In this document: piece after piece, positions 3,431-39,129 of the stretch | Layout: each line of letters opens with the position of its first letter | Numbering within the stretch: the stretch's first letter is position 1 | Source: Octopus sinensis | Taxonomy: Eukaryota | Reading direction: 5' to 3' | Assembly: GCF_006345805.1 (NCBI RefSeq) | Contig: NW_021835196.1 | Span: 1 to 41,834 of the forward strand | DNA: 41,834 bases | Made by a program: the position numbers and the translations under genes | Notes under the pieces: model-generated | What the model was told of the DNA's origin: nothing | Seen by the model: the letters and a program-made list of their open reading frames with translations, nothing else | The model's database searches: none

Positions 3431-3569
3431 TATATATACACACACACAAATATATATGCATACATATGAGCATACCACACATATATATATATATATATAT
3501 ATGAGCATATATAGATATCGTAGAACTCCAGTATAACTGCGTCTAATGACGCAACGTAGTAGATATATA

Positions 3570-5890: not shown

Positions 5891-6204
5891 GGAGGTAACA
5901 TGGCCTAGTGGTTAGAGCAGCTGACTCGCGGTCGAGGGATCACGAGTTCGAATCTCAGACCGAGCGATGTGTGCGTTTATGAGCGAAACACCTAAGCTCC
6001 ACGCTGCTCCGGCAGAAGGTAATGGCGAACTTCTGCTGACTCTTTCGTCACAACATTCTCTCACTCTTTCCTCCTGCATCTTGCAGCTCACCTGCGACGG
6101 ACCGGCGTCCCGTCCAGGTGGGGAACCTATACGCCAATGAAACCAGGAAACCGGCTCTTATGAGCCAGGCATGGCTCGAGAAGGAACAAAACAACAACAA
6201 CAAC
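5891..6204 (+). mobile_element. tRNA-derived SINE, family C
   Basis: A box TGGCCTAGTGG, B box GAGTTCGAATCT, tail ending in (AAC)n. Confidence 0.85.
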
Positions 6205-6974: not shown

Positions 6975-7690
6975 ATATAAGTTAGTTAATTTTTTGGCTC
7001 AAAAAGCAAAAAGCAAGACCATGTAGGGGGACATGGAGTTATGTACAGGGTGGTGTCCATGTAAAGAGTTCAGGCCACTTGAGGTCAAGGGAGACTTTGA
7101 ACCGAGCGGTCGTCGGCATCTTCACCATCTCGTCTGGCAGATTATTCCACGGATCCGCAACCCGGACGGAGAAAGCCCCTCTCCTTCGATTGAGATGAAA
7201 TCGTCGCAGATAGAGCTTTTCGGAATGACCCCCGCAGTCGACGCTCTGGAGTAGGAGTGAAGAACAGCTCTTTCAAGAGGTTACACTTTCCGCTTATGAT
7301 GTTGTGAGCAAGAATGAGATCTCCACGGCGTCGTCGTTTTTCTAGAGAATAAAGGTCGAGCGTCTTCAGCCTTTCTTCATAAGACAGATTCTTGAGACCA
7401 AGAACCATGCGGGTAGCCAGCTTCTGGACTCTTTCGAGATACTGTATGAATTTGAGGAGATAAGGAGAAGAGGCTTGAATCCCGTACTCCAATATGGGTC
7501 TCACCAGCGTGACATAGAGCGGTAGGAATATGGCTGCTGTGAGCATTCCGAATGACCGTCGAATCAAGAACAGAATTCCGCGTGCTTTGTTGGCAGCATG
7601 GACGCACTGGGCCGAAGGCAAAAAGGAGGAATCCACCAAGATACCTAGGTCCTTTACCTGATCGGTCCTCTCCAGCAGCAGACGACCCGG
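6975..7690 (-). mobile_element. CR1-clade LINE 3' fragment (C-terminal part of the RT ORF), frameshifted
   Basis: QVKDLGILVDS...LVRPILEYG...LERVQKLATRMV.GLKNLSYEERLKTLDLYSLEKRRRRGDLI are hallmark CR1 motifs. After a 1-nt frameshift near 7230 the reading continues HSEKLYLRRFHLNRRRGAFSVRVADPWNNLPDEMV...FKVSLD. Confidence 0.93.
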
Positions 7691-7789
7691 CTCGAAATCA
7701 TGTTGAGTTGCAGGAGGAGAGCCAACGGGCATTACAGGTTAATAATTTTAGAAAGTGGGTTGTGCTTCTGTATTGCAAAATGGTCAGCA

Positions 7790-8418: not shown

Positions 8419-8520
8419 TTATATATAACGTAAAGTATACTAGCCATCTCAAAATGGCTAACCACTAAGGGTGGGTGTTACTGTAGCTTTTAGCCCTAGG
8501 AGATCATCGTCTCCAGCTGG

Positions 8521-8711
8521 CTTTAGGCACACTTTCTGTGCTCTTATTGCATTTGCAAAGGGAGGTCATCCCTCTCTCGTAAACCTAAGCGATACGCACG
8601 GACTGCAGTTTCGAGGTATTTGCCTCTTGTCCGTGCGTATCGCATAGGTTTACGAGAGAGGGATGACCTCCCCTTGCAAATACCATAAGGGCACAGAAAG
8701 TGTGCCTAAAG
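8521..8711. repeat. 83-bp-arm inverted repeat (5 mismatches, 25-nt spacer)
   Basis: Arms aligned by hand. Confidence 0.93.
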
Positions 8712-8764
8712 ATTTATTATTGCTAAATATATATATATATATATATTATTTATTTTATAGAAGG

Positions 8765-8812
8765 AGCTTCTACAGGACTAGAACTGTTTCATTCAGAAAT
8801 CATCAGGAAGCT
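8765..8812 (-). ncRNA. Type I hammerhead-like motif, copy 1 (3-nt deletion in loop II)
   Basis: Minus strand: AGCTTC-CTGATGA-TTTCTGAAT-GAAA-CAG-TTCTAGTC-CTGT-A-GAAGCT. Confidence 0.6.
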
Positions 8813-8859
8813 CTTCTGATGATTTCTTTTGAATGAAACAGTATAGTCCTGTAGAAGCT
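8811..8859 (+). ncRNA. Type I hammerhead-like motif, copy 2 (stem I disrupted at the inversion junction)
   Basis: CTCTT-CTGATGA-TTTCTTTTGAAT-GAAA-CAG-TATAGTC-CTGT-A-GAAGCT. Confidence 0.5.
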
Positions 8860-9053
8860 CCTTCTATAAAATAAATTAATTTACTCTGCTATGTATTGAG
8901 TACCTTATTTACTGTGGTTAACCCCGACTCAACCCGGGACCTACCTATATATATATATATATATATATGTAGGTCCCGGGTTGAGTCGGGGTTAACCACA
9001 GTAAATAAGGTACTCAATACATAGCAGAGTAAATTAATTTATTTTATAGAAGG

Positions 9054-9106
9054 AGCTTCTACAGGACTAGAACTGTTTCATTCAAAAGAAATCATCAGGA
9101 ATAGCT
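9054..9106 (-). ncRNA. Type I hammerhead-like motif, copy 3 (2-nt insertion in stem I)
   Basis: Minus strand: AGCTATTC-CTGATGA-TTTCTTTTGAAT-GAAA-CAG-TTCTAGTC-CTGT-A-GAAGCT. Confidence 0.6.
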
Positions 9107-9138
9107 AAAAGCTACAGTAACACCCACCCTTAGTGGTT

Positions 9139-9410
9139 AGCCCAATGGTTAAGGGAGCCTACTTGCGATCGTAGGATCTCGGTTTCGATTCCCAGACCAG
9201 GCGTTGTGAGTGTTTATTGAGCGAAAACACCTAAAGCTCCGGCGGTCCCTGCTGTGCTCTTTCGCCACAACTTTCTCTCACTCTTACTTTTGTTAGCCTG
9301 CTCGCTTAGCCAGCGGGGTGGCGTCATTTGAAGGCTAAAACAATGCGAAGCGCATTGTGACCAGCGATGTGTAGCAACATCTGATAGCCTGCTCAGTCAC
9401 AGTGATCACG

Positions 9411-9414
<4 letters not shown>
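9139..9414 (+). mobile_element. tRNA-derived SINE, family D
   Basis: tRNA-like head (agcccaatggtt...ggtttcgattccc); central segment shared with family C (gagcgaaa.cacctaa.gctcc...ctctttcg.cacaac.ttctctcactct); different tail. Confidence 0.8.
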
Positions 9415-9448
<34 letters not shown>

Positions 9449-9461
9449 ATTTTATAGAAGG

Positions 9462-9512
9462 AGCTTCTACAGGACTAGAACTGTTTCATTCAAAAGAAAT
9501 CATCAGGAAGCT
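9462..9512 (-). ncRNA. Type I hammerhead-like motif, copy 4 (intact, 51 nt)
   Basis: Minus strand: AGCTTC-CTGATGA-TTTC-TTTT-GAAT-GAAA-CAG-TTCTAGTC-CTGT-A-GAAGCT; 6-bp stem I, 4-bp stem III, GUA cleavage triplet. Confidence 0.75.
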
Positions 9513-9729
9513 TGCTGTCAAAATAAGTTTTGGCATTTATACATTTAGGCAGATTTAATGGGGTGGTGGTGGGGGACATTTTTGGGTAAGCAGGGCACAA
9601 ACTGTCATTCTTAGGGGAGTGGTCAAAAGAATCAGTGATAAAGTAGATAAATGAATAAATTGAATAATAGAATAAAGTTTTAGGTAAATAAGAACTATCG
9701 CTTATATATTATATATATATATATTATAT

Positions 9730-9772
<43 letters not shown>

Positions 9773-9873
9773 ACATATACACATACTCATACATTCACAC
9801 ACACATATATACATACACACATATACATACATATACAGATACACATACACATACATGCCAACATGCAAGCACA

Positions 9874-10010
9874 ACAGCAAGCTTCCTGATGATTTCATTT
9901 GAATGAAACAGTTCTAGTCCTGTAGAAGCTCCTTCCATAAAATAAATTAATTTACTCTGCTATGTATTGAGTACCTTATTTACTGTGGTTAACCCCGACT
10001 CAACCCGGGA

Positions 10011-10012
<2 letters not shown>
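9874..10012 (+). mobile_element. Probable Penelope-like 3' terminal fragment (hammerhead + AATAAA + ~70-nt tail ending in (TA)n)
   Basis: Near-identical to 8816-8944 (+) and 8968-9098 (-); always abuts (TA)n. The PLE assignment is inferred from the hammerhead plus the inverted arrangement. Confidence 0.6.
9880..9930 (+). ncRNA. Type I hammerhead-like motif, copy 5 (intact, 51 nt)
   Basis: AGCTTC-CTGATGA-TTTC-ATTT-GAAT-GAAA-CAG-TTCTAGTC-CTGT-A-GAAGCT. Confidence 0.75.
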
Positions 10013-10052
<40 letters not shown>

Positions 10053-10328
10053 TTTATACATGCATATATATGCACACACACACACATACACACACACACA
10101 CAAAGGATTATATATACATGCACCTAGATATGTATATGCCTGGGGTTTCTAACCCCAGGAGTTTACTCTGTTAAGCCGAACCTTGTCTATAGGCTATCAG
10201 ACAGTCTGTAAACTGGAGATGGTTTGTTCTACCAAACCCAAACATATGAAAATTCCATGAAGTTCCATAGAGTTTCATACTGACGAATGAGAAGACTGGA
10301 GCGAACATATTTTACTACTCATATGTCA

Positions 10329-12763: not shown

Positions 12764-13184
12764 GACAAGCGTTGCTTATTCTCAAAGGTAAGTGTGTGTG
12801 AATTTCTCACTGGGGGTTTCTCGTTAGGGCTAGGAGATTAACAAAGTTTGAGCAGCATCAAATGCCAACATATGCTTACATGCGATTCCGCACTTCCATT
12901 CATATAATATATGAATTTTTTGCGTAGGGATATTATTATTAATTAATATTCTAGAAACAGCTAGAAGACCTTCTATCTATAAATGTTCTAATATCTATAC
13001 AGCCTTGGTTTTTTTTATCTCATTACACAAAAAATTAATATATACACACGCTGACATAGAGCCAACGTTGAACCCCTTATTCGAAATATTACCGAATCTG
13101 GAACTTAACTATGGTCTGTTTATAGCACTTATTCAGCATTACCTGACACCTTTGGGTCTCAATGACACCATTATCTCTTATAAT

Positions 13185-13227
<43 letters not shown>

Positions 13228-16291: not shown

Positions 16292-16296
16292 GTGGA

Positions 16297-16347
<51 letters not shown>

Positions 16348-19300
16348 ATGGATGGATGGATGGATGGATGGATGGATGGATGGATGGATGGATGGGTGGA
16401 TAGATGAATGTATGGATGGGTACATAGATGGATGGAAGGATGGATGGATGGATGGGTGGACGGATGGATGGATGGGTGGATGGGTGGATGGATGGGTGGA
16501 TGGATGGGTGAATGGATGGATGGATGAATGGGTGGATGGGTGGAAGGATGGTTGAATGGATGGGTGGATGGATGGATGGATGGATGGATGGATGGATGGG
16601 TGGACGGATGGTTGAATGGGTGGATGGATGGATGGATGAATGGATGGATGGATGAATGGATGGGTGGATGAATGGATGGATGGATGGATGGATGGATGGA
16701 TGAATGGATGGATGGATGGATGGATGGAGGATGGATGGATGGATGGATGGATTGGTGGATGGATGGATGGATGGATGACTGGATGGATGGATGGAAGAAT
16801 GGATGGATGGATGAATGGATGGATGGAAGGATGCATTGATGGATGGATGGATGGATGGATGGATGGGTGGGTGGATGGATGGTTGAATGGATGGATGGAT
16901 AGATGGTTGGATGGATGGATGGACGGATGAATGGATGGATGGATGAATGGATGGTTGGATGGATGGATGGATGAATGGATGGGTGGATGAATGTATGGAT
17001 GGATGGAAGGATGGATGGAAGGATGGATGGATGGATGGATGGTTGGATGGATGGATGGATGGATGAATGGATGGGAGGATGAATGGATGGATGGATGGAT
17101 GAATGGATGGTTGGATGGATGGATAGATGGATGGATGGATGGATGGATGGATGAATGGAAGGATGGATGGATGGATGGATGGATGGATGGATGAATGGAT
17201 GAATGGAAAGATGGATGGATGGATGTGTGGGTGGATGAATGGATGGATGAATGGATGGACGAATGGAAAGATGGATGGATGGATGGGTGGATGAATGTAT
17301 GGATGGATTGACGGAAGGATAGATGAATGGATTGATGGATGGATGGATGGATGGATAGATGAATGGAATGGGTGGATGAATGTATGGATGGATTGACGGA
17401 AGGATAGATGAATGGAAGGATGGGTGGATAAATGGATTGATGGATGGATGGATGGATGGATAGATGAATGGAATGCGTGGATGAATGGATGGAAGGATGC
17501 ATGGATAGATGGATGGATGGATGGATGGGTGGATGGATGGATGGATGGATGGGTGGATGAATGGATGGATTGAAGGATGCATGGATGGATGGATGGATGG
17601 ATGGGTGGGTGAATATATGGATATATGGATGGATGGATGGGTGGAAGAATGGATGGATGGATGGAAGGATGGAAGGATGCATGGATGAATGGATGGATGG
17701 ATGGATGGATGAATGGATGGATGGATGGAGGGATGGATGGGTGGATGGGTGGATGAATGGATGGATTGATGAATGGATGGAATGAGTGACGGAGGGAAGG
17801 ATGGATGAATGGATGAATGGATGTAATGAGGGATGGATGGATGGATGAATGAATGGATGAATGAATGGATGGATGAATGGGTGGATGGATGGATGGATGG
17901 ATGGGTGGATGGATGGATGGATGGATGGGTAGATAGATGGATGAAAGGATGGATGGATGAATGGATGGATGGATGGATGGATGAATGGATGGGTGGATGA
18001 ATGGATGGATGGATGGATGGAAGGATGGATGGATGGATGGGTGGATGTATGGATGGATTGGTGGGTGGATGGATGGATTGGTGGATGGATGGATGGATTG
18101 GTGGATGGGTGGATGGATGGATGGATGGATTGGTTTATGGATGGATGGATTGGTGGATGGATGGATGGATGGATGGAAGGATGCATGGATGGATGGATGG
18201 ATGGATGGATGGATTGAGGGATGAATGAATGGATGGATGGATGGATAGATGGATGAATGGATGGGTGGATGAATGGATGGATGAATGGATGGATGGATGA
18301 ATGGATGGTTGGATGGATGGGTGGATGGATGGATGGATGAATGGATGGATGGATGGATAGATGAATGGATGAATGGATGGGTGGATGAATGGATGGATGG
18401 ATGGATGGAAGTTTGGATGGATGAATGGATGGATGGATGGATGGGTGGACGGATGGATGGATGGATGGGTTGGATTGTGGGATGGTTGGATGGATGGTTG
18501 GATGGATGGGTGAATGGATGGATGGAACGATGGGTGGATGGATGGGTTGATGGATGGGTGAATGGATGGATGGATGGATGGATGGGTGAATGGATGGGGT
18601 AATGGATGGATGAATGGATGGATGGATGGATGGATGGATGAATGGTTGGGTGGTGAATGGATGGAATGATGGATGGATGGATGAATGGATGGTTGGATGT
18701 ATGGATGGATGGATGGATGAATGGATGGTTGCATGGATGGATGGATGGATGAATGGATGGATGGATAGATGGATGGATGGATGGTTGAATGGATGGATGG
18801 AAGGATGGATGGATGAATGGATGGATGGATGAATGGATGGATGGATAGAAGGACGGATGGATGAATGGATGGGTGGATGGATGGATAGATGGATGGATGA
18901 ATGGATGGATGGATGGATGGATGGGGTAATGGGCGGATGAATGGATGGATGGATGGATGTATGGAAGGATGGAGGATGGATGGATGAATGGATGGGTGGA
19001 TGAATGGATGGATGAATGGAAGGATGGATTGATGGATGGATGGATGAATGGATGGATGGATGGATGAATGGAAGGATGGATGGATGGATGGATGAATGTA
19101 TGAATGGAAGGATGGATGGGTGGATGGATGGGTGGATGAATGGATGGATGGATGTATGGAAGGATGGATGGATGGATGGGTGGATGAATGGATGGATTGA
19201 CGGATGTATGGGTGAATGGATGGATGGATGGATGAATGGGAGGATGAATGGATGAATGGATGAAAAGATGAATGGAATGGGTGGATGAATGGATGGATGT

Positions 19301-22300
19301 AAGGATGCATGGATGAGTGGATGGATGGATGATGGATGGTGGATGGATGGATGGTTGGATGGGTGAATGATGGATGGATGAAAGATGCATGGATGATGGG
19401 TGGATGGATCGTGGATCGATGGATCGAGGATCGATCGGTCGTTGAATGGATGGGTGGATGAATGGATGGATGGATGGATGTATGGTGGAGATGGAATGGA
19501 TGAATGGATGGTTGGATGGATGGATGGATGGATGGATGGGTGGATGGATGGATGGATGGATGGAGAATGGATGGATGGATGGTGGATGGGTGGATGAATG
19601 GATGGTGGATGGATGAATGAATGGATGGATGATGGATGGATTGATGGGTGCTGAATGATGGATGGATGTATGGATGAATGGATGGATGGATGGATGAGGA
19701 TGGATGAATGGGTGGATGAATGGATAGATGGATGGATGGATGGATGAATGGGTGGATGGATGGATGGATGGATGGGTGGATGGATGGTTGAATGGATGGA
19801 TGGATGGATGGGTGGATGGGTGGGTGGATGGATGGGTGAATGGATGGATGGATGGATGGAAGGATTGATGGGTGGATGAATGGATGGATGGATGGATGGA
19901 TGAATGGATGGATGGATGGATGGATGGATGAATGGGTGGATGAATGGATGGATGGATGGATGGATGGATGAATGGATGGATGGATGGATGGATGGGTGGA
20001 TGGATGGTTGAATGGATGGATGGATGGATGGGTGGATGGGTGGGTGGATGGATGGGTGAATGGATGGATGGATGGATGGATGGTAGATGGATGTGGTAAT
20101 GGATGGATGAATGGATGGATGGATGGATGTATGGATGGATGGATGGATGGATGGATGGATGGATGAATGGTTGGGTAGATGAATGGATGGAATGATGGAT
20201 GGATGGATGGATAAATTGATGGTTGGATGGATGGATGGATGAATGGATGAATGGATGGATAGATGGATGAATGGATGGATGGTTGAATGGATGTGTGGAT
20301 GGAAGGATGGATAAATGGATGGGTGGATGAATGGAAGGATGGATGGATGGATGGATGAATGTATGAATGGAAGGATGGATGGGTGGTTGGATGGGTGGAT
20401 GAATGGATGGATGGATGTATGGAAGGATGGATGGATGGATGGGTGGATGAATGGATGGATTGACGGATGTATGGGTGAATGGATGGATGGATGGATGAAT
20501 GGGAGGATGAGTGGATGAATGGATGGATGGATGAAAAGATGAATGGAATGGGTGGATGAATGGATGGATGTAAGGATGCATGGATGAGTGGATGGATGGA
20601 TGGATGGATGGGTGGATGGATGGATGGATGGATGGGTGAATGAATGGATGGATGGAAGGATGCATGGATGGATGGGTGGATGGATGGATGGATCGAGGGA
20701 TCGAGGGATCGATCGGTCGTTGGATGGATGGGTGGATGAATGGATGGATGGATGGATGTATGGGTGGATGGATGGATGGATGAATGGATGGTTGGATGGA
20801 TGGATGGATGGATGGATGGGTGGATGGATGGATGGATGGATGAATGGATGGATGGATGGGTGGATGGGTGGATGAATGGATGGATGGATGGATGAATGAA
20901 TGGATGGATGGATGGATGGATGGATTGATGGGTGGCTGAATGGATGGATGGATGGATGGATGGATGAATGGATGGATGGATGGATGTGGATGAATGGGTG
21001 GATGAATGGATGGATGGATGGATGGATGGATGAATGGGTGGATGGATGGATGGATGGTTGATGGGTGGAGGAGTTGACTGGATGGATGGATGGATGGGTG
21101 GATGGGTGGGTGGATGGATGGGTGAATGGATGGATGGATGGATGGATTGGATGGATTGATGGGGGTGGATGAATGGATGGATATGGGATGGATGGATGAT
21201 GATGGATGGATGGATGGATGAAGGGTGGATGAATGGATGGATGGATGGATGGATGGATGAATGGATGGATGGATGGATGGATGGGTGGATGGATGGTTGA
21301 ATGGATGGATGGATGGATGGGTGGATGGGTGGGTGGATGGATGGGTGAATGGATGGATGGATGGATCGATGGGTAGATGGATGTGGTAATGGATGGATGA
21401 ATGGATGGATGGATGGATGTATGGATGGATGGATGGATGGATGGATGGATGAATGGTTGGGTAGATGAATGGATGGAATGATGGATGGATGGATGGATGA
21501 ATGGATGGTTGGATGGATGGATGGATGAATGGCTGAATGGATGGATAGATGGATGAATGGATGGATGGTTGAATGGATGGGTGGATGGAAGGATGGATAA
21601 ATGGATGGGTGGATGAAAGGAAGGATGGATGGATGAATGGATGGATGGATGGATGGATGGATGGATGGATGGATGGATGGATGGATGGATGTTTGAATGG
21701 ATGGGTGAATGGAGGGTTGGATGGATGGATGGATTTATGGATGGATTGATGGATGGGTGGATGAATGGATTGAAGGATGGATGAATGGATGGGTGGATGA
21801 ATGGATGGATGAATGGAAGGATGAATGGATGGATGGATGGATGAATGGAAGGATGGATGGATGGATGGATGGATGAATGGATGAATGGAAGGACGGATGG
21901 ATGGATGGATGGGTGGATGAATGGATGGATGGATGGATGAATGGAATGATGGATGGATGGATGGGTGGATGAATGGATGGATGGATTGACGGATGGATAG
22001 ATTAATGGATGGTTGGATGGATGAATGGAAGTATGGGAGGATGAATGGATGGATGGATGAATAGATAAATGGAATGGGTGGATGAATGGATGGATGGAAG
22101 GATGCATGGATGGATGGTTGGATGGATTTATGGATGGATGGATGGATGGGGTAATGGATGGATGAATGGATTGATGAATGGATGGATGGATGGATGGATG
22201 AATGGATGGGTGGATGAATGGATTGAAGGATGGATGAATGGATGGATGAATGGATGGGTGGATGAATGGATGGATGAATGGAAGGATGAATGGATGGATG

Positions 22301-25300
22301 GATGGATGAATGGAAGGATGGATGGATGAATGGATGGATGGATGGATGAATGGATGAATGGAAGGATGGATGGATGGATGGATGGATGGGTGGATGAATG
22401 GATGGATGGATGGATGGACGAATGGAAGGATGGATGGATGGATGGGTGGATGAATGTATGGATGGATTGACGGATGGATAGATGAATGGATGGCTGGATG
22501 GATGAATGGAAGGATGGGTGGATGAATGTATGGATGGATGGATGGATGGGATGGATGGATGATGGATGGATAGATGAATGGAATGGGTGGATGAATGGAT
22601 GGATGGAAGGATGCATGGATAGATGGATGGATGGATGAGTGGATGAATGGATGGATGGGAGGATGCATGGATGGATGGATGGATGGTTGGATGGGTGGGT
22701 GAATGGATGGATGGATGGATGGATAAATGGATGGATGGATATATGGATGGATGGATGGGTGGAAGAATGGATGGATGGATGGAAGGATGGAAGGATGCAT
22801 GGATGAATGGATGGATGGATGGATGGATGAATGGATGGATGGATGGAGGGATGGATGGGTGGATGAATGGATGGATGGATGAATGGATGGGTGGATGAAT
22901 GGATGGAATGAGTGACGGATGGAAGGATGGATGGATGTTTGAATGGATGTAATGAGGGGTGGATGGATGGATGAATGAGTGGATGAATGAATGGATGGAT
23001 GAATGGATGGATGGATGGATGTATGTATGGATGGATGGATAGATGGATGGATGGATGAATGGATGGGTGGGTGAATGGATGGAAGGATGGATGGATGGAT
23101 GAATGGATGGTTGGATGGATGGATGGGTGGATGAATGGATGGATGGATGGATGGATGGATGGATGGAAGGATGCACGGATGGATGGATGATGGATGGATG
23201 GATGAATGGATGGGTGGATGAATGGATGGATGGATGGAAGGATGCATGGATTGAGGGATGGGTGGATATATGGAAGGAGGGATGGAAGGAGGGACGGATG
23301 GAAGCATGGATGGATAAATGGAAGGATGGATGGATGGATGGATTGATGGATGGATGGATGGATGGATGGGTGGGTGGACGGATGGATGGATGGAAGGAGG
23401 GACGGATGGAAGGATGGATGGATGGATGAATGGATGGAATGATGGATGGATGGATTGATGAATGGATGGAATGATGGATGGATGGATGGATGATTGGATT
23501 GGTGGATGAATGGATGGATGGATAGATGGTTGGATGGATGGATGGATGAAAGGATGGATGGATGGATGGTTGGATAGATGGATGGATGGATGGTTGAATG
23601 GATGGATGAATGGATGGTTGGATGGATTGATGGATGGATGAATGGATTGATGGATGATGGATGGATGGATGGATGGATGGATGGGTGGATGAATGAATGG
23701 AAGGTTGGATGGATGGATGGATGGATTGATGGGTGGATGAATGGATGGATGGATGAATGGATGGATGCATGGATGGATGCATGGATGGGTGGATGAATGG
23801 ATGGAATAATGGATGGATAAATGGATGGGTGGATGTATGGATGGATGGATGGGTGGATGAATGGATGGAAGGATGGATGGATGAATGGATTGATGGATGG
23901 ACGATGGATGAATGGATGGATGGATGGATGGATGGAGGGATGGATGGGTGGATGAATGGATGGATGGATGAATGGATGTGTGGATGAATGGCTGGAAGGA
24001 GCGACGAGTGGAAGGATGGATGGATGGATGGATGGAATGATGGATGGATGGATGGATGAATGGATGGATGGATGTATGGATGGAAGGACAGATGGTGGGA
24101 TGGATGGATGGATGAATGGATGGATGGATGGATGGATGGATAGATGGATGGATGGATGGTTGAATGGATGGATGAATCGATGGTTGGATGGATGGATGGA
24201 TGGATGGATGAATGGAAGGATGGGTGGATAAATGGGTGGATGGATGAATGGATGAATGGAATGGGTGGATGAATGGATGGATGGATGGATGGATGGATGA
24301 AGGGAAGGATGGGTGGATGATTGGATGGATGGATGAATGGATGGATGGATGGGTGGATAGATGGATGGATGAATGGATGGGTGTTGAATAAATGCGTGGA
24401 TGAATGGAAGGAAGGATGCATGCATGGATGGATGGATGAATGGATCGGTGGATGGATGGATGGATGGATGGATGGATGGGTTGGTGAATGGATGGAGGGG
24501 AGGATGCATGGAAGGATGGATGGATGTATGGATGGTTGGATGGAAGGATGCATGGATGGATGGATGAATGGATAGATGGATAGATGGGTGGATGGATGGA
24601 TGGATGAATGGATGGATGGTGAATGGATGGGTGGATGTATGGATGGAAGGATGCATGGATGGATGGATGGATGGATGGATGGATGAATGGGTGGATGGAT
24701 GGATGGATGGATGGATTGGGGATGAATGGATGGATGGGAGGATGCATGGATGGATGGAAGAATGGATGGATGGAAGGATGGTTGAATGGATGGATGGATG
24801 GATCGATTGATCGATCGATCGATCGATGGATGGGTGGATGAATGGATGGATGGATGGATGGGTGCATGAATGGATGGATGGATGGATGGGTGGAAGGTTG
24901 GATGAATGGATGGATGGATGGATGGATGAATGGATGGATGGATGGATGGATTGATTGATGGGAGGATGAATGGTTGGATGGTTGGATGGATGGATGGATG
25001 GGTGGATGAATGGATGGATGGATGAATGGATGGATGGATGAAAGGATGGATGGATGGATGGATGGGTGGATGAATGGATGGATGGATGGATGGAAGGATG
25101 CATGGATGGATGGATGGATGGATGATGGATGGATGGATGGATGAATGGATCGGTGGATGAATGGATGGATGGATGGATTGATGGAAGGATGGATGGATGG
25201 ATATATGGAAGGAGGGATGGAAGGAGGGACGGATGGAAGCATGGATGTATGGATGGATAGATGGATGGATGGATTGTTGGATGGATGGATGGATGTATGG

Positions 25301-28195
25301 ATGGATGGGTTGACGGATGGATGGATGGATGGATGGGTGGATGGGTGGATGGTTGGATGGATGGATGGATGTATGGATGGATGGTTGGACGGATGGATGG
25401 ATGGATGGGTGGATGGATGGGTGGATGGATGGGTGGATGGATGGGTAAATGGATGGATGGATTGATTGATGGATGGTTGGATTGGTGGATGGATGGATGG
25501 ATAGTTGGATGGATGGATGGTTGGTTGGATGGATGGATGGATGGATGGATGGTTGGATGGTTGGATGAATTGATGTTTGGATTGATGGATGGATGGATGG
25601 ATGGATGGGTGGATGTATGAATGGTTGGGTGGAAGAATGAATGGAATGATGGATGGATGTATGGATGGATGGATGGATGGATGGATGGATGTATGGTTGG
25701 GTGGATGAATGGATGGAATGATGGATGGATGGATGGATGAATGGATGGTTGGGTGGATGGATGGATGGATGGATGGATGAATGGATGGATGGTAGATGGA
25801 TGGATGGATGGATGGTTGAATGGATGTATGGATGGATGGATGGATGGATGAATGGATGGTTGGATGAATGGATGGATGGATGGATGGATGAATAGATGGA
25901 TGGATGGATGCATGGATAGATGGATGGATGGATGGATGGTTGAAAGGATGGATGAATGGATGGTTGGATGGATGGATGGATGGATGGATAGATGGATGAA
26001 TGGATGGATGGATGGATGGATGGGGTAATAAATGGATGAATGGATGGATGGCTGGATGTATGTATGTATGTATGGATGGATGGATGGATGGATGAATGGA
26101 TGGGTGGATGAATGGATGGAAGTATGGATGGATGGTTGGATGAATGGATGGGTGGGTGAATTGATGGATGAATGGAAGGAATGATTGATGGATGGGTGGA
26201 TGAATGGATGGATGGATGAATGGAAGAATGGATGGATGGATGGATGGATGGTTGGATGAATGGATGAATGGAAGGATGGATGGATGGGTGGATGAATGGA
26301 TGGATGGATGAATGGAAGAATGGATGGATGGATGGATGGATGGTTGGATGAATTGATGAATGGAAGGATGGATGGATGGATGGATGGATGGATGGGTGGA
26401 TGAATGGATGGATGGATGAAGGGAAGGATGAATGGGTGGAATGATGAATGGATGGATGGATTGATGGATGGATGGATGAATGGATGGATGGATGGATGAA
26501 TGGAAGGTTTGGTGGATGAATTGATGGATGGATGAATAGATGAATGGAATGGGTGGATGAATGGATGGATGGATGGATGAAGGGAAGGATGGGTGGATGA
26601 ATGGATGTATGAATGAATAGATGCATGGAATGGGTGGATGAATGGATGGATGGATAGATGGATGAATGGATGTATGGATGGATGGATGGATGGATGAATG
26701 GATGGGTGGATGAATGGATGGATGGATGGATGGATGGATGAATGGATGGATGGTTGGTCGGATGGATGGATGAATGGAAGGGGTGGATGGATGGTTGAAT
26801 GTATGGATGAATGGATGTTTGGATGAATGGATGGATGGATAGATTGATGAATGGATGGATGGATGGATGGATGGGTTAATGGATGGATGAATGGATGGAT
26901 GGATGGATGGATGAATGGATGGGTGGATGAATGGATGGATGAATGGAAGGATGGATTGATGGATGGATGGACGAATGGATTGTGGATGGATGGATGGATG
27001 AATGGATGAATGGAAGGATGGGTGGATGGATGGATGGATGGATGAATGGATGAATGGAAGGATGGATGGATGGATGGATGGGTGGATGAATGGATGGATG
27101 GTTGGAAGGATGCATGGATGGATGGATGGATGGATGGATGGATAAATGGATGGATGGATGGGTGGATGAATGGATGGATGGAAGGATGGATGGATGGATG
27201 GATGGATGGATGAATGGATGGATGGATGGATGGATGGGTGGATGAATGGATGGATGAATGGATGGATGGATGGAGGGATGGTGGGATGCATGAATGGATG
27301 GATGGATGGATGGATGATGGATGAATGGATGGATGAATGGATGGATGGATGCATGGAAGGATGCATGGATGGATGGATGGATGATGGATGAATGGATGGA
27401 TGGATGGATGGATGGATGGATGGAAGGAGTCATGGATGGATGGATGGATGGATGGATGGATGGATGGATTGATCGATGGATGGGTGGACGGATGGATGGA
27501 TGGTTGGATGGTGGGATGTTTGGATGGATGGTTGGATGGATTGGTGAATGGATGGGTGGATGGATGGGTGAATGGATGGATGGATGGATGGATGGATTTT
27601 TGGATTGGTGGATGGATGGATGGATGGTTGGATGGGTGGATGGATGGTTGGATGGATGATTGCTGGATGTATGTTTGGATGGTTGGATGAATTGATGGTT
27701 GGATGGATGGATGTATGGATGAATGGTTGGGTGGGTTGATGGATGTTTGGATGAAAGAATGGATGGATGGATGGGTGGACGGATGGATGGATGGATGGTT
27801 GGATGGATGGATGGTTGGATGGATGGGTGGATGGTTTGATGGGTGGTGTGTGGATGGATGGTTGGATCGATGGATGGATCTATCGATGGATGGATGAATG
27901 GATGGCGGATGGTTGGATGGATGGATGTTTGGATGGATGGATGGATGGATGGATGGATTGTTGGATAGGTGGATGAATGGTTGGATGTTTGGATGAATGG
28001 ATGGTTGGATGGATAGATGGATGGATGGTTGGATGTGTGGATGGATGGATGGGTGGATGGATGGATGTTTGGATGGATGGATGGTTGGATGGATGGTTGG
28101 ATGGATGGATGGATGTTTGGATGGATGGGTGGATGGATGGATGGATGGAAGGATGGATGGATGGATGGATGGATGGATGGATGGATGGATTGATG
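16292..28195 (+). repeat. ~11.9-kb imperfect (GGAT)n tetranucleotide array, led by (GGCT)n at ~16298-16345
   Basis: Direct inspection; variant units GAAT, GGGT, GGTT, AGAT, GCAT. Confidence 0.98.
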
Positions 28196-28462
28196 GGGGT
28201 TTGTTTTGGTAGATGGGAGATTGGCAGAACGAAAAGGGAGAAAATGAAAGAATGAAAGAATCGACGAAACAGAAGAATGAGTTTCGATGTTCTTGTTTGT
28301 TTATTTGGAATCGGTTATAAGGTGTGTGAATGGGTGGGACAGGAGTGGAAGAATGGAAGAATGTGAATGAAATGAGTGTTTGGAAACGTTGACAAGAGAA
28401 CCTCGTAAATCATCCATTCCACTCAATTTGCTGCCACCTCTCTCTCTCTCTCTTTCCCTTCC

Positions 28463-31028: not shown

Positions 31029-31608
31029 ATTTCTTTATTGCCCACAAAGGGATAAACATAGAAGGGATAAACAAGGACAGACAAAGGAGTTGAGTCGATA
31101 ACATCGACCCCAGTGCGTAACGGGTACTTAATTTATCGAACCCGAAAGGATGAAAGGCAAAGTCGACATCGGCGGAATTTAAACACAGAACGTAACGGCA
31201 GACGAAATGCCTATTTCTTTATGACCCACAAGGGCCTAAACACAGAAGGGACAAACAAGGACAAAGGGATTTAGTCGATTATATCGACCGCAGTGAGTAA
31301 CTGGTACTTATTTAAAATCGACCCCGAAAGGATGAAAGGCACAGTCGACCTCGGCGGAATTTGAACTCAGAACATAACGGCAGACGAAATACCTGTTTCT
31401 TTATTACCCACAAGGGGCTAAACATAGAGGGGACAAACAAGGACAGACATAGGTATTAAGTCGATTACATCAACCCCAGTGCGTAACTGGTACTTAATTT
31501 ATCGACCCCGAAAGGAAATAGAGGCACAGTCGACTTCGGCGGAATTTGAACTCAGAACGTAAGCATTTCGCCCGGCGTGCTAATGATTCTGCCAGCTCGC
31601 CGCCTTAA
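31029..31608 (-). mobile_element. SINE family B trimer (one head + three ~183-bp bodies) with an 18-bp TSD
   Basis: Units start at 31029, 31213 and 31395; head at 31561-31606; ATTTGGCTGTTAT(G/T)TCTA at 31011-31028 and 31609-31626. Confidence 0.9.
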
Positions 31609-38696: not shown

Positions 38697-39113
38697 AAGG
38701 CATCGAGCTGGCAGAAACGTTAGCACACCGGACGAAATACGTACCCGTATTTCGTCTGCTGTTACATTCTGAGTTCAAATTCCGCCGAGGTCGACTTTGC
38801 CTTTCATCGTTTCGGGGTCGATAAATTAAGTACCAGTTACACACTGGAGTCGGTATAATCGACTTAATCTATTTGTCTGTCCTTGTTTGTCCTCTCTGTG
38901 GTTAGCCCTTTGTGCGTAGAAAAGAAATAGGTATTTCGTCTGTCTTTACGTTCTGAGTTCAAATTCCGCCGAGGTCGACTTTGCCTTTCATCTTTTCGGG
39001 GGTCGATAAATTAAGTACCAGTTACGCACTGGGGTCGATATAATCCACTCAATCCATTTGTCTGTCCTTGTTTGTCCTCTCTGTGTTTAGCTCCTTGTGG
39101 GTAGTAAAGAAAT
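38697..39113 (+). mobile_element. SINE family B dimer (one head + two bodies)
   Basis: Junction aaagaaata|ggtatttcgtctg at 38929/38930. Confidence 0.9.
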
Positions 39114-39129
39114 ATGTATGTATGTATGT

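What the first reader, a model, noticed from the sequence alone, without database searches (positions are those of the whole stretch)
8765..9930. Five copies of a minimal type I hammerhead ribozyme motif, on both strands, within 1.2 kb
Seen: the unit AGCTTC-CTGATGA-TTTC(TTTT)GAAT-GAAA-CAG(TTCTAGTC)CTG-T-A-GAAGCT occurs at 8765-8812(-), 8811-8859(+), 9054-9106(-), 9462-9512(-) and 9880-9930(+). It has the full catalytic core (CUGAUGA, GAAA, GUA cleavage triplet), a 6-bp stem I, a 4-bp stem III whose loop contains the palindrome CUAG, and an AATAAA shortly after the cut site. Known: Penelope-like elements and retrozymes carry minimal type I hammerheads with palindromic stem III loops that can act as dimers. 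Inference: these are ends of a non-autonomous PLE/retrozyme-like family. The three minus-strand copies would cut at 9468/9467, 9060/9059 and 8771/8770, releasing ~408-nt and ~289-nt RNAs; the 408-nt piece contains an antisense SINE.
Basis: partly seen in the sequence, partly recalled or inferred. Interest (0 to 1): 0.85.

Follow-up and report, generated by a model that had tools for sequence, protein, structure and literature searches.

The report
Octopus hammerhead ribozyme repeats in (TA)n
A short repeat carrying a type I hammerhead self-cleaving RNA motif has landed five times, in both orientations, in one (TA)n microsatellite of an octopus genome; it looks like debris of a Penelope-like retroelement, a known kind of thing, and only two or three copies still look able to fold as a ribozyme.

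Summary
The five copies sit at the stated coordinates, and no other copy occurs in the 41.8-kb window. All five keep the hammerhead core (CUGAUGA, GAAA, GUA). Only three (9880+, 9512-, 8812-) keep an unbroken 6-bp stem I. Copy 8812- has lost 3 nt of loop 2. Copies 8811+ and 9106- have a broken stem I.

Stem II is weak: 3 bp plus a U.U mismatch at 10.1/11.1. Rfam does not call the motif. However, the cleaving axolotl retrozyme ribozyme HHR_Amex2 has the same U.U mismatch. A covariance model I built from four experimentally active animal type I hammerheads ranks these five sites first in the window.

The host is an octopus. Each copy has its 3' end against a (TA)n tract, and the copies lie head-to-head. 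There are two alternative 3' ends, and the long one ends in an AC-rich segment 88 nt after the cut site. All of this matches published Penelope-like element (PLE) insertion signatures.

No RT/GIY-YIG ORF and no tandem array is present. This is therefore not a retrozyme array, and the PLE link is inferred. The predicted 289-nt and 408-nt cleavage products are unlikely.

Verdict: new member of a known kind, moderate-to-low interest.

The parts
8726..8746 (.). (TA)n tract abutting the 3' end of copy 8812-
   Evidence: sequence
8747..8812 (-). Short copy. Hammerhead at 8765-8812: core intact, stem I 6-7 bp, loop 2 shortened by 3 nt so stem II is 2 bp. The 3' end lies ~23 nt after the cut site (8771/8770) and runs straight into (TA)n.
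   Evidence: 19.9 bits with model R1
8809..8946 (+). Long copy, joined head-to-head to 8812- at the AAGCT(T) palindrome of stem I. Hammerhead at 8809-8859: core intact, stem I 5' strand altered (bulge/mismatch), loop 3 UAUAGUC (CUAG lost).
   Evidence: 95% to 9874-10012; 15.3 bits
8947..8968 (.). (TA)11 between the tails of 8811+ and 9106-; centre of a 113-nt-arm, 99% perfect palindrome (8844-9069)
   Evidence: (I2)
8969..9103 (-). Long copy, 5'-truncated inside the stem I 5' strand (TA-TTCCTGATGA...). Hammerhead remnant at 9054-9103; cut site would be 9060/9059.
   Evidence: fails descriptor; 98.5% to 9880+ copy; 12.1 bits = noise level
9104..9414 (+). tRNA-derived SINE relative. Its 5' end is joined head-to-head to copy 9106-, and its 3' end lies against (TA)n.
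   Evidence: 70% match to the tRNA-like SINE at 5903-6068; its 3' half is found 5'-truncated between two (TA)n tracts in O. vulgaris (L008 20162-20282)
9415..9445 (.). (TA)n tract between the SINE 3' end and the 3' end of copy 9512-
9446..9518 (-). Short copy with the best-preserved hammerhead (9462-9512): stem I 6 bp, stem II 3 bp + U.U, stem III 4 bp, loop 3 UUCUAGUC, cut site 9468/9467. Its 5' boundary ACAGCA is shared with 9880+.
   Evidence: 22.2 bits, E~2e-4; dimer cofold forms trans helix III
9519..9873 (.). 355-nt spacer between the heads of 9512- and 9880+: unique sequence 9519-9700, then (TA)n/(CA)n-type microsatellite
   Evidence: (I8)
9874..10012 (+). Long copy, 139 nt. ACAGCA, then hammerhead 9880-9930 (intact; loop 2 AUUU; cut 9924/9925), AAUAAA, and an AC-rich 3' end (TTAACCCCGACTCAACCCGGGACC) that stops 88 nt after the cut site.
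   Evidence: 22.1 bits
10013..10040 (.). (TA)n tract abutting the 3' end of copy 9880+

Best explanation
The repeat is the 3'-terminal module of a hammerhead-bearing retroelement of the Penelope-like (PLE) lineage. It is either an extremely 5'-truncated PLE or a short non-autonomous PLE derivative (a 'solo' pLTR/retrozyme-type unit). It has been copied repeatedly into one (TA)n microsatellite of an octopus genome.

Shown:
- The unit carries a complete type I hammerhead: core CUGAUGA/GAAA/GUA, 6-bp stem I, 3 bp + U.U stem II, and 4-bp stem III with a centred CUAG.
- Every copy has its 3' end against (TA)n.
- The copies lie head-to-head.
- Two 3' ends exist, about 23 nt and 88 nt after the cut site.

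Inferred mechanism:
- An element RNA is bound in trans by a PLE RT/GIY-YIG protein.
- The endonuclease nicks both strands of the AT-rich (TA)n target, and each nick primes reverse transcription from one of two internal start sites. This gives the short and the long 3' ends.
- The two cDNAs are joined head-to-head, sometimes at the AAGCUU palindrome of stem I.
- In the RNA, the hammerhead would process multimeric or read-through transcripts at GUA|G. It most likely acts as a dimer through the palindromic loop 3, or with protein help.

At this locus only 9512- and 9880+ (and marginally 8812-) keep a foldable ribozyme. The others are decayed, and the inverted arrangement favours long hairpin RNA over ribozyme folding.
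For: Motif:
- Five hits against 0 in shuffles.
- The descriptor is passed by 3 of 5 copies.
- No comparable motif appeared in 42 Mb of simulated sequence at stems >=5/3/3.
- Model R1, built from the coral, mussel and two axolotl ribozymes that cleave in vitro (sequences from the PMC7229834 supplement), gives 22.2/22.1/19.9/15.3/12.1 bits for the five copies. The window background tops out at 11.8 bits.
- The U.U at the base of helix II has an active precedent: axolotl HHR_Amex2 has ~60,000 copies and cleaves 22% per hour as a monomer, more as a dimer (PMC7229834).
- The identical helix II (UUUC-NAAA-GAAU) occurs in three metagenomic type III hammerheads whose helices I and III covary.
- The dimer cofold MFE builds a 4+4+4-bp trans helix III.

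Context:
- The host is an octopus.
- O. vulgaris has 31 recently active PLE families (PMC13282606).
- PLEs prefer (TA)n or AT-rich targets, carry the hammerhead near the 3' end in the pLTR, and often have an inverted 5'-truncated copy head-to-head (PMC8557442).
- The Anolis PLE protein nicks and extends both strands and starts reverse transcription at two internal sites in an AC-rich stem-loop 85-92 nt past the hammerhead cut (PMC11167929).
- Here the long form ends in an AC-rich segment 88 nt past the cut, and a short form also exists.
- Three successive (TA)n-to-(TA)n intervals each hold a head-to-head pair.
Against: - No RT or GIY-YIG ORF lies in the 41.8-kb window. The only RT fragment is a CR1-like C-terminus at 7142-7732.
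- No copy extends upstream of the hammerhead into PLE sequence.
- Rfam does not recognise the motif: nothing at gathering score, and only a truncated Hammerhead_3 match of 12.1 bits against a threshold of 48.5 at E<=10.
- The monomer fold is not more stable than shuffles, and the hammerhead structure has only 0.4-4% ensemble probability. UUUC can pair with the GAAA core instead.
- The stem dimensions differ from the PLE 'min-HHR' consensus (helix II 6-8 bp, helix I 4-5 bp, G10.1-C11.1; PMC4209133).
- Model R1 scored up to 17.6 bits on control loci that had been selected for the same core string, so the margin is only about 4.5 bits.
- The copies are too similar (94-98%) for any covariation test.
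- The 66-nt difference between the short and long ends is larger than the published 30-40-nt PLE 'tail'.
- The perfect palindrome centred in (TA)11 could be a DNA-level fold-back duplication rather than two retro-insertions.
Confidence: 0.6

Rival explanations
1. Solo monomers of a non-LTR retrozyme. The unit would come from a tandem, circRNA-producing hammerhead repeat array elsewhere in the genome, and these copies are dead-end 'solo retrozyme' insertions.
For: The stem dimensions (I = 6 bp, II = 4 positions with a 4-nt loop, palindromic helix III) fit the canonical retrozyme-type hammerhead better than the PLE min-HHR. Helix III ACAG/CUGU is the same as in the coral retrozyme ribozyme. Solo monomers are described for vertebrate retrozymes, which themselves derive from PLE pLTRs (bioRxiv 10.64898/2026.07.22.740005). 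Molluscs (mussel) have thousands of retrozymes.
Against: There is no direct tandem repeat of the unit anywhere in the window. The unit is 139 nt, below the 170-400 nt reported range. All copies start within ~10 nt of the hammerhead's 5' edge and end at (TA)n, which looks like a linear element with defined ends rather than a permuted slice of a circle.
Confidence: 0.15
2. The hammerhead resemblance is a chance feature of a fold-back or MITE-like repeat, or of a sequence palindromised by hairpin-mediated repair at a fragile (TA)n tract. In that case no ribozyme function was ever selected.
For: - Extrapolating from the simulation, about ten chance hits of this looseness are expected per octopus-sized genome, and one of them inside a repeat would be amplified.
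- Rfam is silent.
- Folding gives no thermodynamic signal.
- There are perfect palindromes centred in (TA)n (I2) and another unrelated 83-nt-arm hairpin next door at 8521-8711 (I3).
- The strongest Rfam sub-threshold hits are MITE-type miRNA hairpins.
Against: - Chance expectation for this one window is ~2e-4.
- The motif also has the canonical 6/4 stem sizes and a centred loop-3 palindrome, neither of which was required by the descriptor.
- It sits in the sense orientation at the same distance from the 3' end as in a biochemically studied PLE.
- Head-to-head pairs include a SINE partner, which fold-back duplication does not explain.
- No TIR/TSD structure could be defined.
Confidence: 0.2
3. 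A C/D-box snoRNA-like or miRNA-precursor gene.
For: SNORD102 scores 17.9-19.3 bits on the motif (terminal stem AGCUU/AAGCU plus UGAUGA). MIR7723 and MIR6217 score ~101-108 bits on the 8844-9069 palindrome.
Against: All of these are far below the gathering scores (47; 200 and 110). The D box is CUGU, not CUGA. The miRNA-model hits simply reflect a long perfect hairpin on both strands.
Confidence: 0.03

Closest known systems
Canonical metazoan type I hammerheads of non-LTR retrozymes (coral Amil224, mussel Mg353, axolotl HHR_Amex1/Amex2; Cervera & de la Pena 2020, PMC7229834)
   Same: Type I topology; full core; 6-bp helix I; 4-position helix II with a 4-5-nt loop; palindromic helix III/loop 3 that allows dimers; U.U at 10.1/11.1 exactly as in the active HHR_Amex2; AT-rich small non-coding unit.
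   Different: Not arranged in direct tandem arrays. The unit is 139 nt rather than 170-400 nt. The rest of helix II is A-U rich (UUC/GAA) instead of G-C. Helix III has a long 8-nt loop. No loop 1/loop 2 tertiary contacts are evident.
Penelope-like elements and their pLTR hammerheads (Cervera & de la Pena 2014, PMC4209133; Craig et al. 2021, PMC8557442; Frangieh et al. 2024, PMC11167929)
   Same: Hammerhead in sense orientation near the 3' end of the inserted unit; (TA)n/AT-rich target; head-to-head inverted 5'-truncated copies; alternative 3' ends; AC-rich 3' terminus ~88 nt after the cut (85-92 nt in Anolis PAc); weak monomer fold with the palindrome expected for dimer or protein-assisted cleavage.
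   Different: No RT/GIY-YIG ORF or pLTR-ORF-pLTR structure is present here. The stems are not the min-HHR type (no 6-8-bp helix II, no G10.1-C11.1, no bulged base after A9). The two 3' ends differ by 66 nt, not 30-40 nt.
Schistosoma Sm-alpha / newt satellite 2 / cave-cricket pDo500 hammerhead repeats
   Same: Short non-coding repeats of animals that carry type I hammerheads and need dimers or cofactors.
   Different: Those are SINE-like or satellite tandem families with G-C helix II. This one is dispersed or inverted inside a microsatellite.

Membership tests
Hammerhead ribozyme, type I | Conserved core C3-U-G-A-N-G-A9, G12-A-A14, A15.1-U16.1, H17 (not G) | tested here: met
   All five copies carry CUGAUGA ... 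GAAA ... U-A
Hammerhead ribozyme, type I | Three helices around the core, with helix I open (type I order) | tested here: met
   Met in 3 of 5 copies (9880+, 9512-, 8812-) with stems 6-7 / 2-3 / 4. Copies 8811+ and 9106- fail on helix I.
Hammerhead ribozyme, type I | G10.1-C11.1 pair closing helix II (highly conserved, PMC4209133) | tested here: not met
   U.U in all copies. Precedents: the active axolotl HHR_Amex2 and three metagenomic type III hammerheads.
Hammerhead ribozyme, type I | Score at or above Rfam gathering threshold (RF00163 / clan CL00010) | tested here: not met
   No hit at gathering. The best clan hit is Hammerhead_3, truncated, 12.1 bits against 48.5. Rfam also misses the hand-verified type III examples L001-L003 at gathering.
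Hammerhead ribozyme, type I | Match to a covariance model of experimentally active animal type I hammerheads | tested here: met
   R1 gives 22.2, 22.1 and 19.9 bits (E 2e-4 to 1e-3, rough) for the three intact copies, against a window background of 11.8. Pattern-selected control loci reach 17.6, so support is moderate.
Hammerhead ribozyme, type I | Compensatory changes in stems and core conservation across diverged copies | tested here: inconclusive
   There are only five copies at 94-98% identity. All ~6 differences lie in loops or at stem I junctions, with P~0.17 by chance.
Hammerhead ribozyme, type I | Site-specific self-cleavage giving 2',3'-cyclic phosphate and 5'-OH | not testable with these tools
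   Needs in vitro transcription or RNA end mapping.
Non-LTR retrozyme | Direct tandem repeats (about 150-450 bp), each unit with a type I hammerhead; at least two consecutive complete units | tested here: not met
   TRF and the repeat finder show no tandem array of the unit. Same-strand copies are 289 and 408 nt apart with unrelated filling.
Non-LTR retrozyme | Expression as monomer-length linear and circular RNA | not testable with these tools
   No transcriptome access.
Penelope-like element (autonomous) | ORF with telomerase-like RT plus GIY-YIG endonuclease | tested here: not met
   Six-frame ORF survey of the whole window finds only a CR1-like RT C-terminal fragment at 7142-7732.
Penelope-like element (insertion signature) | AT-rich / (TA)n target preference | tested here: met
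   All five 3' ends abut (TA)n. Literature: PMC8557442, PMC11167929.
Penelope-like element (insertion signature) | Inverted 5'-truncated copy head-to-head with another copy | tested here: met
   8812-|8811+ are fused within stem I; 9512-|355 nt|9880+; 9106-|SINE.
Penelope-like element (insertion signature) | Optional 30-40-bp 'tail' from two internal reverse-transcription start sites | tested here: inconclusive
   Two 3' ends exist (+23 and +88 nt from the cut), but they differ by ~66 nt.
PLE 'min-HHR' (Cervera & de la Pena 2014) | Helix II 6-8 bp, helix I 4-5 bp, extra base between 9 and 10.1, helix III absent or minimal | tested here: not met
   Here helix I is 6 bp, helix II is 3 bp + U.U, and helix III is 4 bp with an 8-nt loop.

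The most novel reading that the evidence does not exclude
The locus is a natural record of dual-strand target-primed reverse transcription at a (TA)n microsatellite. Each (TA)n-to-(TA)n interval holds two cDNAs joined head-to-head. In one interval the partner of the hammerhead module is a tRNA-derived SINE. This would mean that an octopus PLE (or another (TA)n-specific RT) mobilises both a hammerhead mini-element and a SINE in trans. It would also make this the first cephalopod hammerhead family.
Probability: 0.15. Interest if true: 0.6.

Novelty: new member of a known kind. Interest (0 to 1): 0.35.

Why it matters
Hammerhead ribozymes tied to Penelope-like elements and retrozymes are already known in thousands of copies across invertebrates, molluscs included. 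A cephalopod example extends the list rather than changing the picture.

It has some value in three ways:
- It is a second natural case, after axolotl HHR_Amex2, of a type I hammerhead with a U.U base in helix II.
- It shows that Rfam thresholds miss such variants.
- The tidy head-to-head, (TA)n-flanked pairs, one of them with a SINE, offer a genomic test of the both-strands-primed insertion model that so far rests on in vitro work with one lizard PLE.

Tried and rejected
1. Rfam at gathering score on the window, and at E<=10 on 8500-10300 and on 9870-9940. There was no hammerhead call. The strong sub-threshold hits were miRNA-hairpin models on the palindromes.
2. Looking for more copies:
   - Pattern scans of metagenome contigs and genome contigs returned only unrelated DNA, although three real type III hammerheads with the same helix II turned up.
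   - A protein-word search with the antisense ORF that spans the hammerhead found nothing.
   - Exact-protein look-ups of two window ORFs found nothing.
   - A literature full-text search for sequence strings gave only primers.
3. I hoped the O. vulgaris locus of the best RT homologue (L008) would be orthologous to the window. It is only a paralogous TE copy and has no hammerhead.
4. Supplements of the PLE papers are not held as text.
5. Monomer MFE folding gave no signal. That is expected for dimer-type hammerheads, so it is not decisive.
6. A snoRNA reading (SNORD102, ~18-19 bits) was rejected because there is no D box.
7. I could not obtain a PLE protein query from within the session, so the linkage test to an octopus PLE ORF was not run.
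Full report
**Observation.**
Reading 8600-10200 and pattern searches confirm five copies of CTGATGA...GAAACAG...CTGTAGAAGC, at 8766-8806(-), 8816-8858(+), 9055-9098(-), 9463-9506(-) and 9886-9929(+). There were none in 100 shuffles. Only one other CTGATGA occurs in the whole 41.8-kb window.

BLAST of the 139-nt unit against the window finds these five sites and nothing else, at 94-98% identity. They are therefore one repeat family, not five independent observations.

The alignment shows two length classes:
- Long units (8811+, 9106-, 9880+) run from the hammerhead to ...GGTTAACCCCGACTCAACCCGGGACCTA and then into (TA)n.
- Short units (8812-, 9512-) run into (TA)n about 23 nt after the cut site, just past AAUAAA.

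**Anatomy of the motif.**
On its sense strand the consensus reads as follows:
- AGCUUC (stem I 5' strand)
- CUGAUGA (core)
- UUUC-UUUU-GAAU (stem-loop II)
- GAA (core)
- ACAG-UUCUAGUC-CUGU (stem-loop III, including A15.1-U16.1)
- A17 | GAAGCU (cut site, then stem I 3' strand)

The core is complete in all five copies. A descriptor scan passes only three:
- 9880+ with stems I/II/III of 6/3/4
- 9512- with 6/3/4
- 8812- with 7/2/4, because 3 nt of loop 2 are deleted

Copy 8811+ has a changed stem I 5' strand and has lost the CUAG in loop 3. Copy 9106- is cut inside the stem I 5' strand where a SINE abuts it.

Canonical hammerheads have G-C at that position (PMC4209133).

**Is it more than chance?**
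In 42 Mb of first-order Markov sequence modelled on the window, no site reached stems >=5/3/3, and nine reached >=4/2/2. My extrapolation gives about 2e-4 expected per window, but of the order of ten per octopus-sized genome. Chance cannot be dismissed on the descriptor alone.

Rfam gives no support. There is nothing at gathering score. At E<=10 there is only a truncated Hammerhead_3 match of 12.1 bits against a threshold of 48.5.

Monomer folding is no better than shuffles. The hammerhead fold has 0.4-4% ensemble probability, partly because UUUC can pair with the GAAA core instead.

Four results speak for a real hammerhead:
1. The U.U at the base of helix II is exactly what Cervera & de la Pena describe for axolotl HHR_Amex2. 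That ribozyme has ~60,000 copies and cleaves 22% in an hour as a monomer, much better as a dimer (PMC7229834; sequence).
2. A metagenome scan for CTGATGATTTC-N-GAATGAAACAG returned three sites. By hand they are textbook type III hammerheads, with different, fully paired helices I and III and the same UUUC-NAAA-GAAU helix II. Rfam scores them 31.7 and 18.9 bits, also below gathering. Rfam's silence is therefore weak evidence.
3. I built a covariance model (R1) from four type I hammerheads that cleave in vitro: coral Amil224, mussel Mg353, and axolotl Ax353 and Ax330. With filters off, its top five hits in the window are exactly the five copies, each aligned over the full model. The scores are 22.2, 22.1, 19.9, 15.3 and 12.1 bits, and the background starts at 11.8. 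Control loci that I had selected for the same core string reach 17.6 bits, whereas unselected octopus DNA reaches 11.8. The support is real but moderate.
4. Loop 3 has CUAG exactly centred. Cofolding two copies of the consensus gives an MFE with a 4+4+4-bp trans helix III, which is the dimer architecture of newt, retrozyme and PLE hammerheads.

**Host and neighbourhood.**
The window is extremely microsatellite-rich. The ORF at 7142-7732(-) is the C-terminus of a CR1-like RT. It is 89% identical in protein to an Octopus vulgaris entry and 93% identical in DNA to a paralogous copy on an O. vulgaris chromosome (L008). SINE copies match that locus at 80-92%. The host is therefore an octopus.

A six-frame survey finds no RT/GIY-YIG ORF in the window.

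The element at 9104-9414 is a diverged relative (70%) of the tRNA-derived SINE at 5897-6100. In O. vulgaris its 3' half lies 5'-truncated between two (TA)n tracts. It therefore also targets (TA)n.

**Layout.**
From left to right the region reads:
- (TA)n 8726-8746
- <-8812 short | 8811 long->
- (TA)11
- <-9106 long | SINE->
- (TA)n 9415-9445
- <-9512 short | 355 nt | 9880 long->
- (TA)n 10013 onward

Three successive (TA)n-to-(TA)n intervals thus each hold two elements head-to-head, with their 3' ends against the microsatellite. The first junction lies in the AAGCUU palindrome of stem I. All five hammerhead copies begin within about 10 nt of the ribozyme's 5' edge, and 9512- and 9880+ share ACAGCA.

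**Comparison with the literature.**
PLEs carry hammerheads in their pLTRs near the 3' end. They prefer (TA)n or AT-rich targets, often have an inverted 5'-truncated copy head-to-head, and show an optional tail at one end (PMC8557442).

The purified Anolis PLE protein nicks and extends both DNA strands. It starts reverse transcription at two internal sites in an AC-rich stem-loop 111-118 nt into the ORF. The hammerhead cut lies 26 nt into the ORF, so the start sites are 85-92 nt past the cut. That ribozyme needs the protein to cleave (PMC11167929).

Here the long unit ends in an AC-rich stretch 88 nt past the cut, and a second, shorter 3' end exists. O. vulgaris has 31 recently active PLE families (PMC13282606). 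A 2026 preprint argues that animal retrozymes are pLTR derivatives and that solo monomers are common.

**Interpretation.**
The best reading (about 0.6) is a PLE-lineage 3' module. It is either a severely 5'-truncated PLE or a short non-autonomous derivative, inserted repeatedly by target-primed reverse transcription into one (TA)n tract. The hammerhead would be its RNA-processing motif.

The steps from 'PLE-like signature' to 'mobilised by a PLE' and from 'motif' to 'cleaves' are inferred, not shown.

The main rivals are:
- a solo retrozyme monomer (0.15), which the stem dimensions favour but the missing tandem array does not;
- a chance motif in a fold-back or palindromised repeat (0.2).

The middle minus-strand ribozyme (9106-) has no stem I. 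A minus-strand RNA from 9110 to 8765 folds into a ~140-bp near-perfect hairpin of -247 kcal/mol (z = -39) that buries it. The inverted pairs are more likely to give hairpin or double-stranded RNA than ribozyme products.

**Verdict.**
This is a new member of a known kind, and the score of 0.85 is too high.

Noticed in passing
window 16293-28196: A ~12-kb (TGGA)n microsatellite, 2984 copies at 79% matches. It creates mechanical ORFs of 3731 and 3475 aa on the minus strand and skews base composition (G 11757 against C 5549).
   Followed up: no
window 7142-7732 (-): A 196-aa ORF that is the C-terminal part of a CR1-like non-LTR reverse transcriptase. It is 89% aa identical to an Octopus vulgaris entry and 93% nt identical over 650 bp to a paralogous copy in O. 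vulgaris chromosome OX597823.1. This identifies the host as an octopus.
   Followed up: partly
window 8726-10040: Three consecutive (TA)n-to-(TA)n intervals each contain two elements joined head-to-head, with their 3' ends against the microsatellite. One pair is hammerhead unit + tRNA-derived SINE (junction 9103/9104). This is the pattern expected if both strands of the target prime reverse transcription.
   Followed up: partly
window 8456-8494 and 9104-9142; L008 20162-20282: The first 39 nt of the SINE-like element recur 100% identical and inverted at 8456-8494. In O. vulgaris the SINE's 3' 120 nt lies 5'-truncated between two (TA)n tracts, so this SINE also targets (TA)n.
   Followed up: partly
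window 8521-8603 / 8629-8711: An unrelated hairpin with 83-nt arms (94% complementary, 25-nt loop) sits in the neighbouring (TA)n-flanked interval. It may be another head-to-head pair, or a fold-back duplication.
   Followed up: no
window 8844-9069: A 113-nt-arm, 99% perfect palindrome centred in (TA)11. It draws ~100-bit but sub-threshold hits from several plant and animal miRNA-precursor models in Rfam on both strands. It is a hairpin-RNA candidate, not a member of any miRNA family.
   Followed up: partly
window 31029-31562 and 38747-39119: Tandem repeats of 182-185 bp (2.9 and 2.0 copies) built from octopus SINE-like sequence. Many further SINE copies are scattered through the window.
   Followed up: no
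L001 11482-11536(-), L002 184-236(+), L003 about 3480-3560(-): Three metagenomic type III hammerheads with helix II UUUC-NAAA-GAAU (U.U at 10.1/11.1) and covarying helices I and III. All are below Rfam's gathering score (31.7 and 18.9 bits measured for two of them).
   Followed up: partly
L001 13700-13770 (-): A second, canonical type III hammerhead (helix II GACU/AGUC) lies 2.2 kb from the first on the same metagenome contig UEXM01002163.1. There may be a third near 13180-13212.
   Followed up: no
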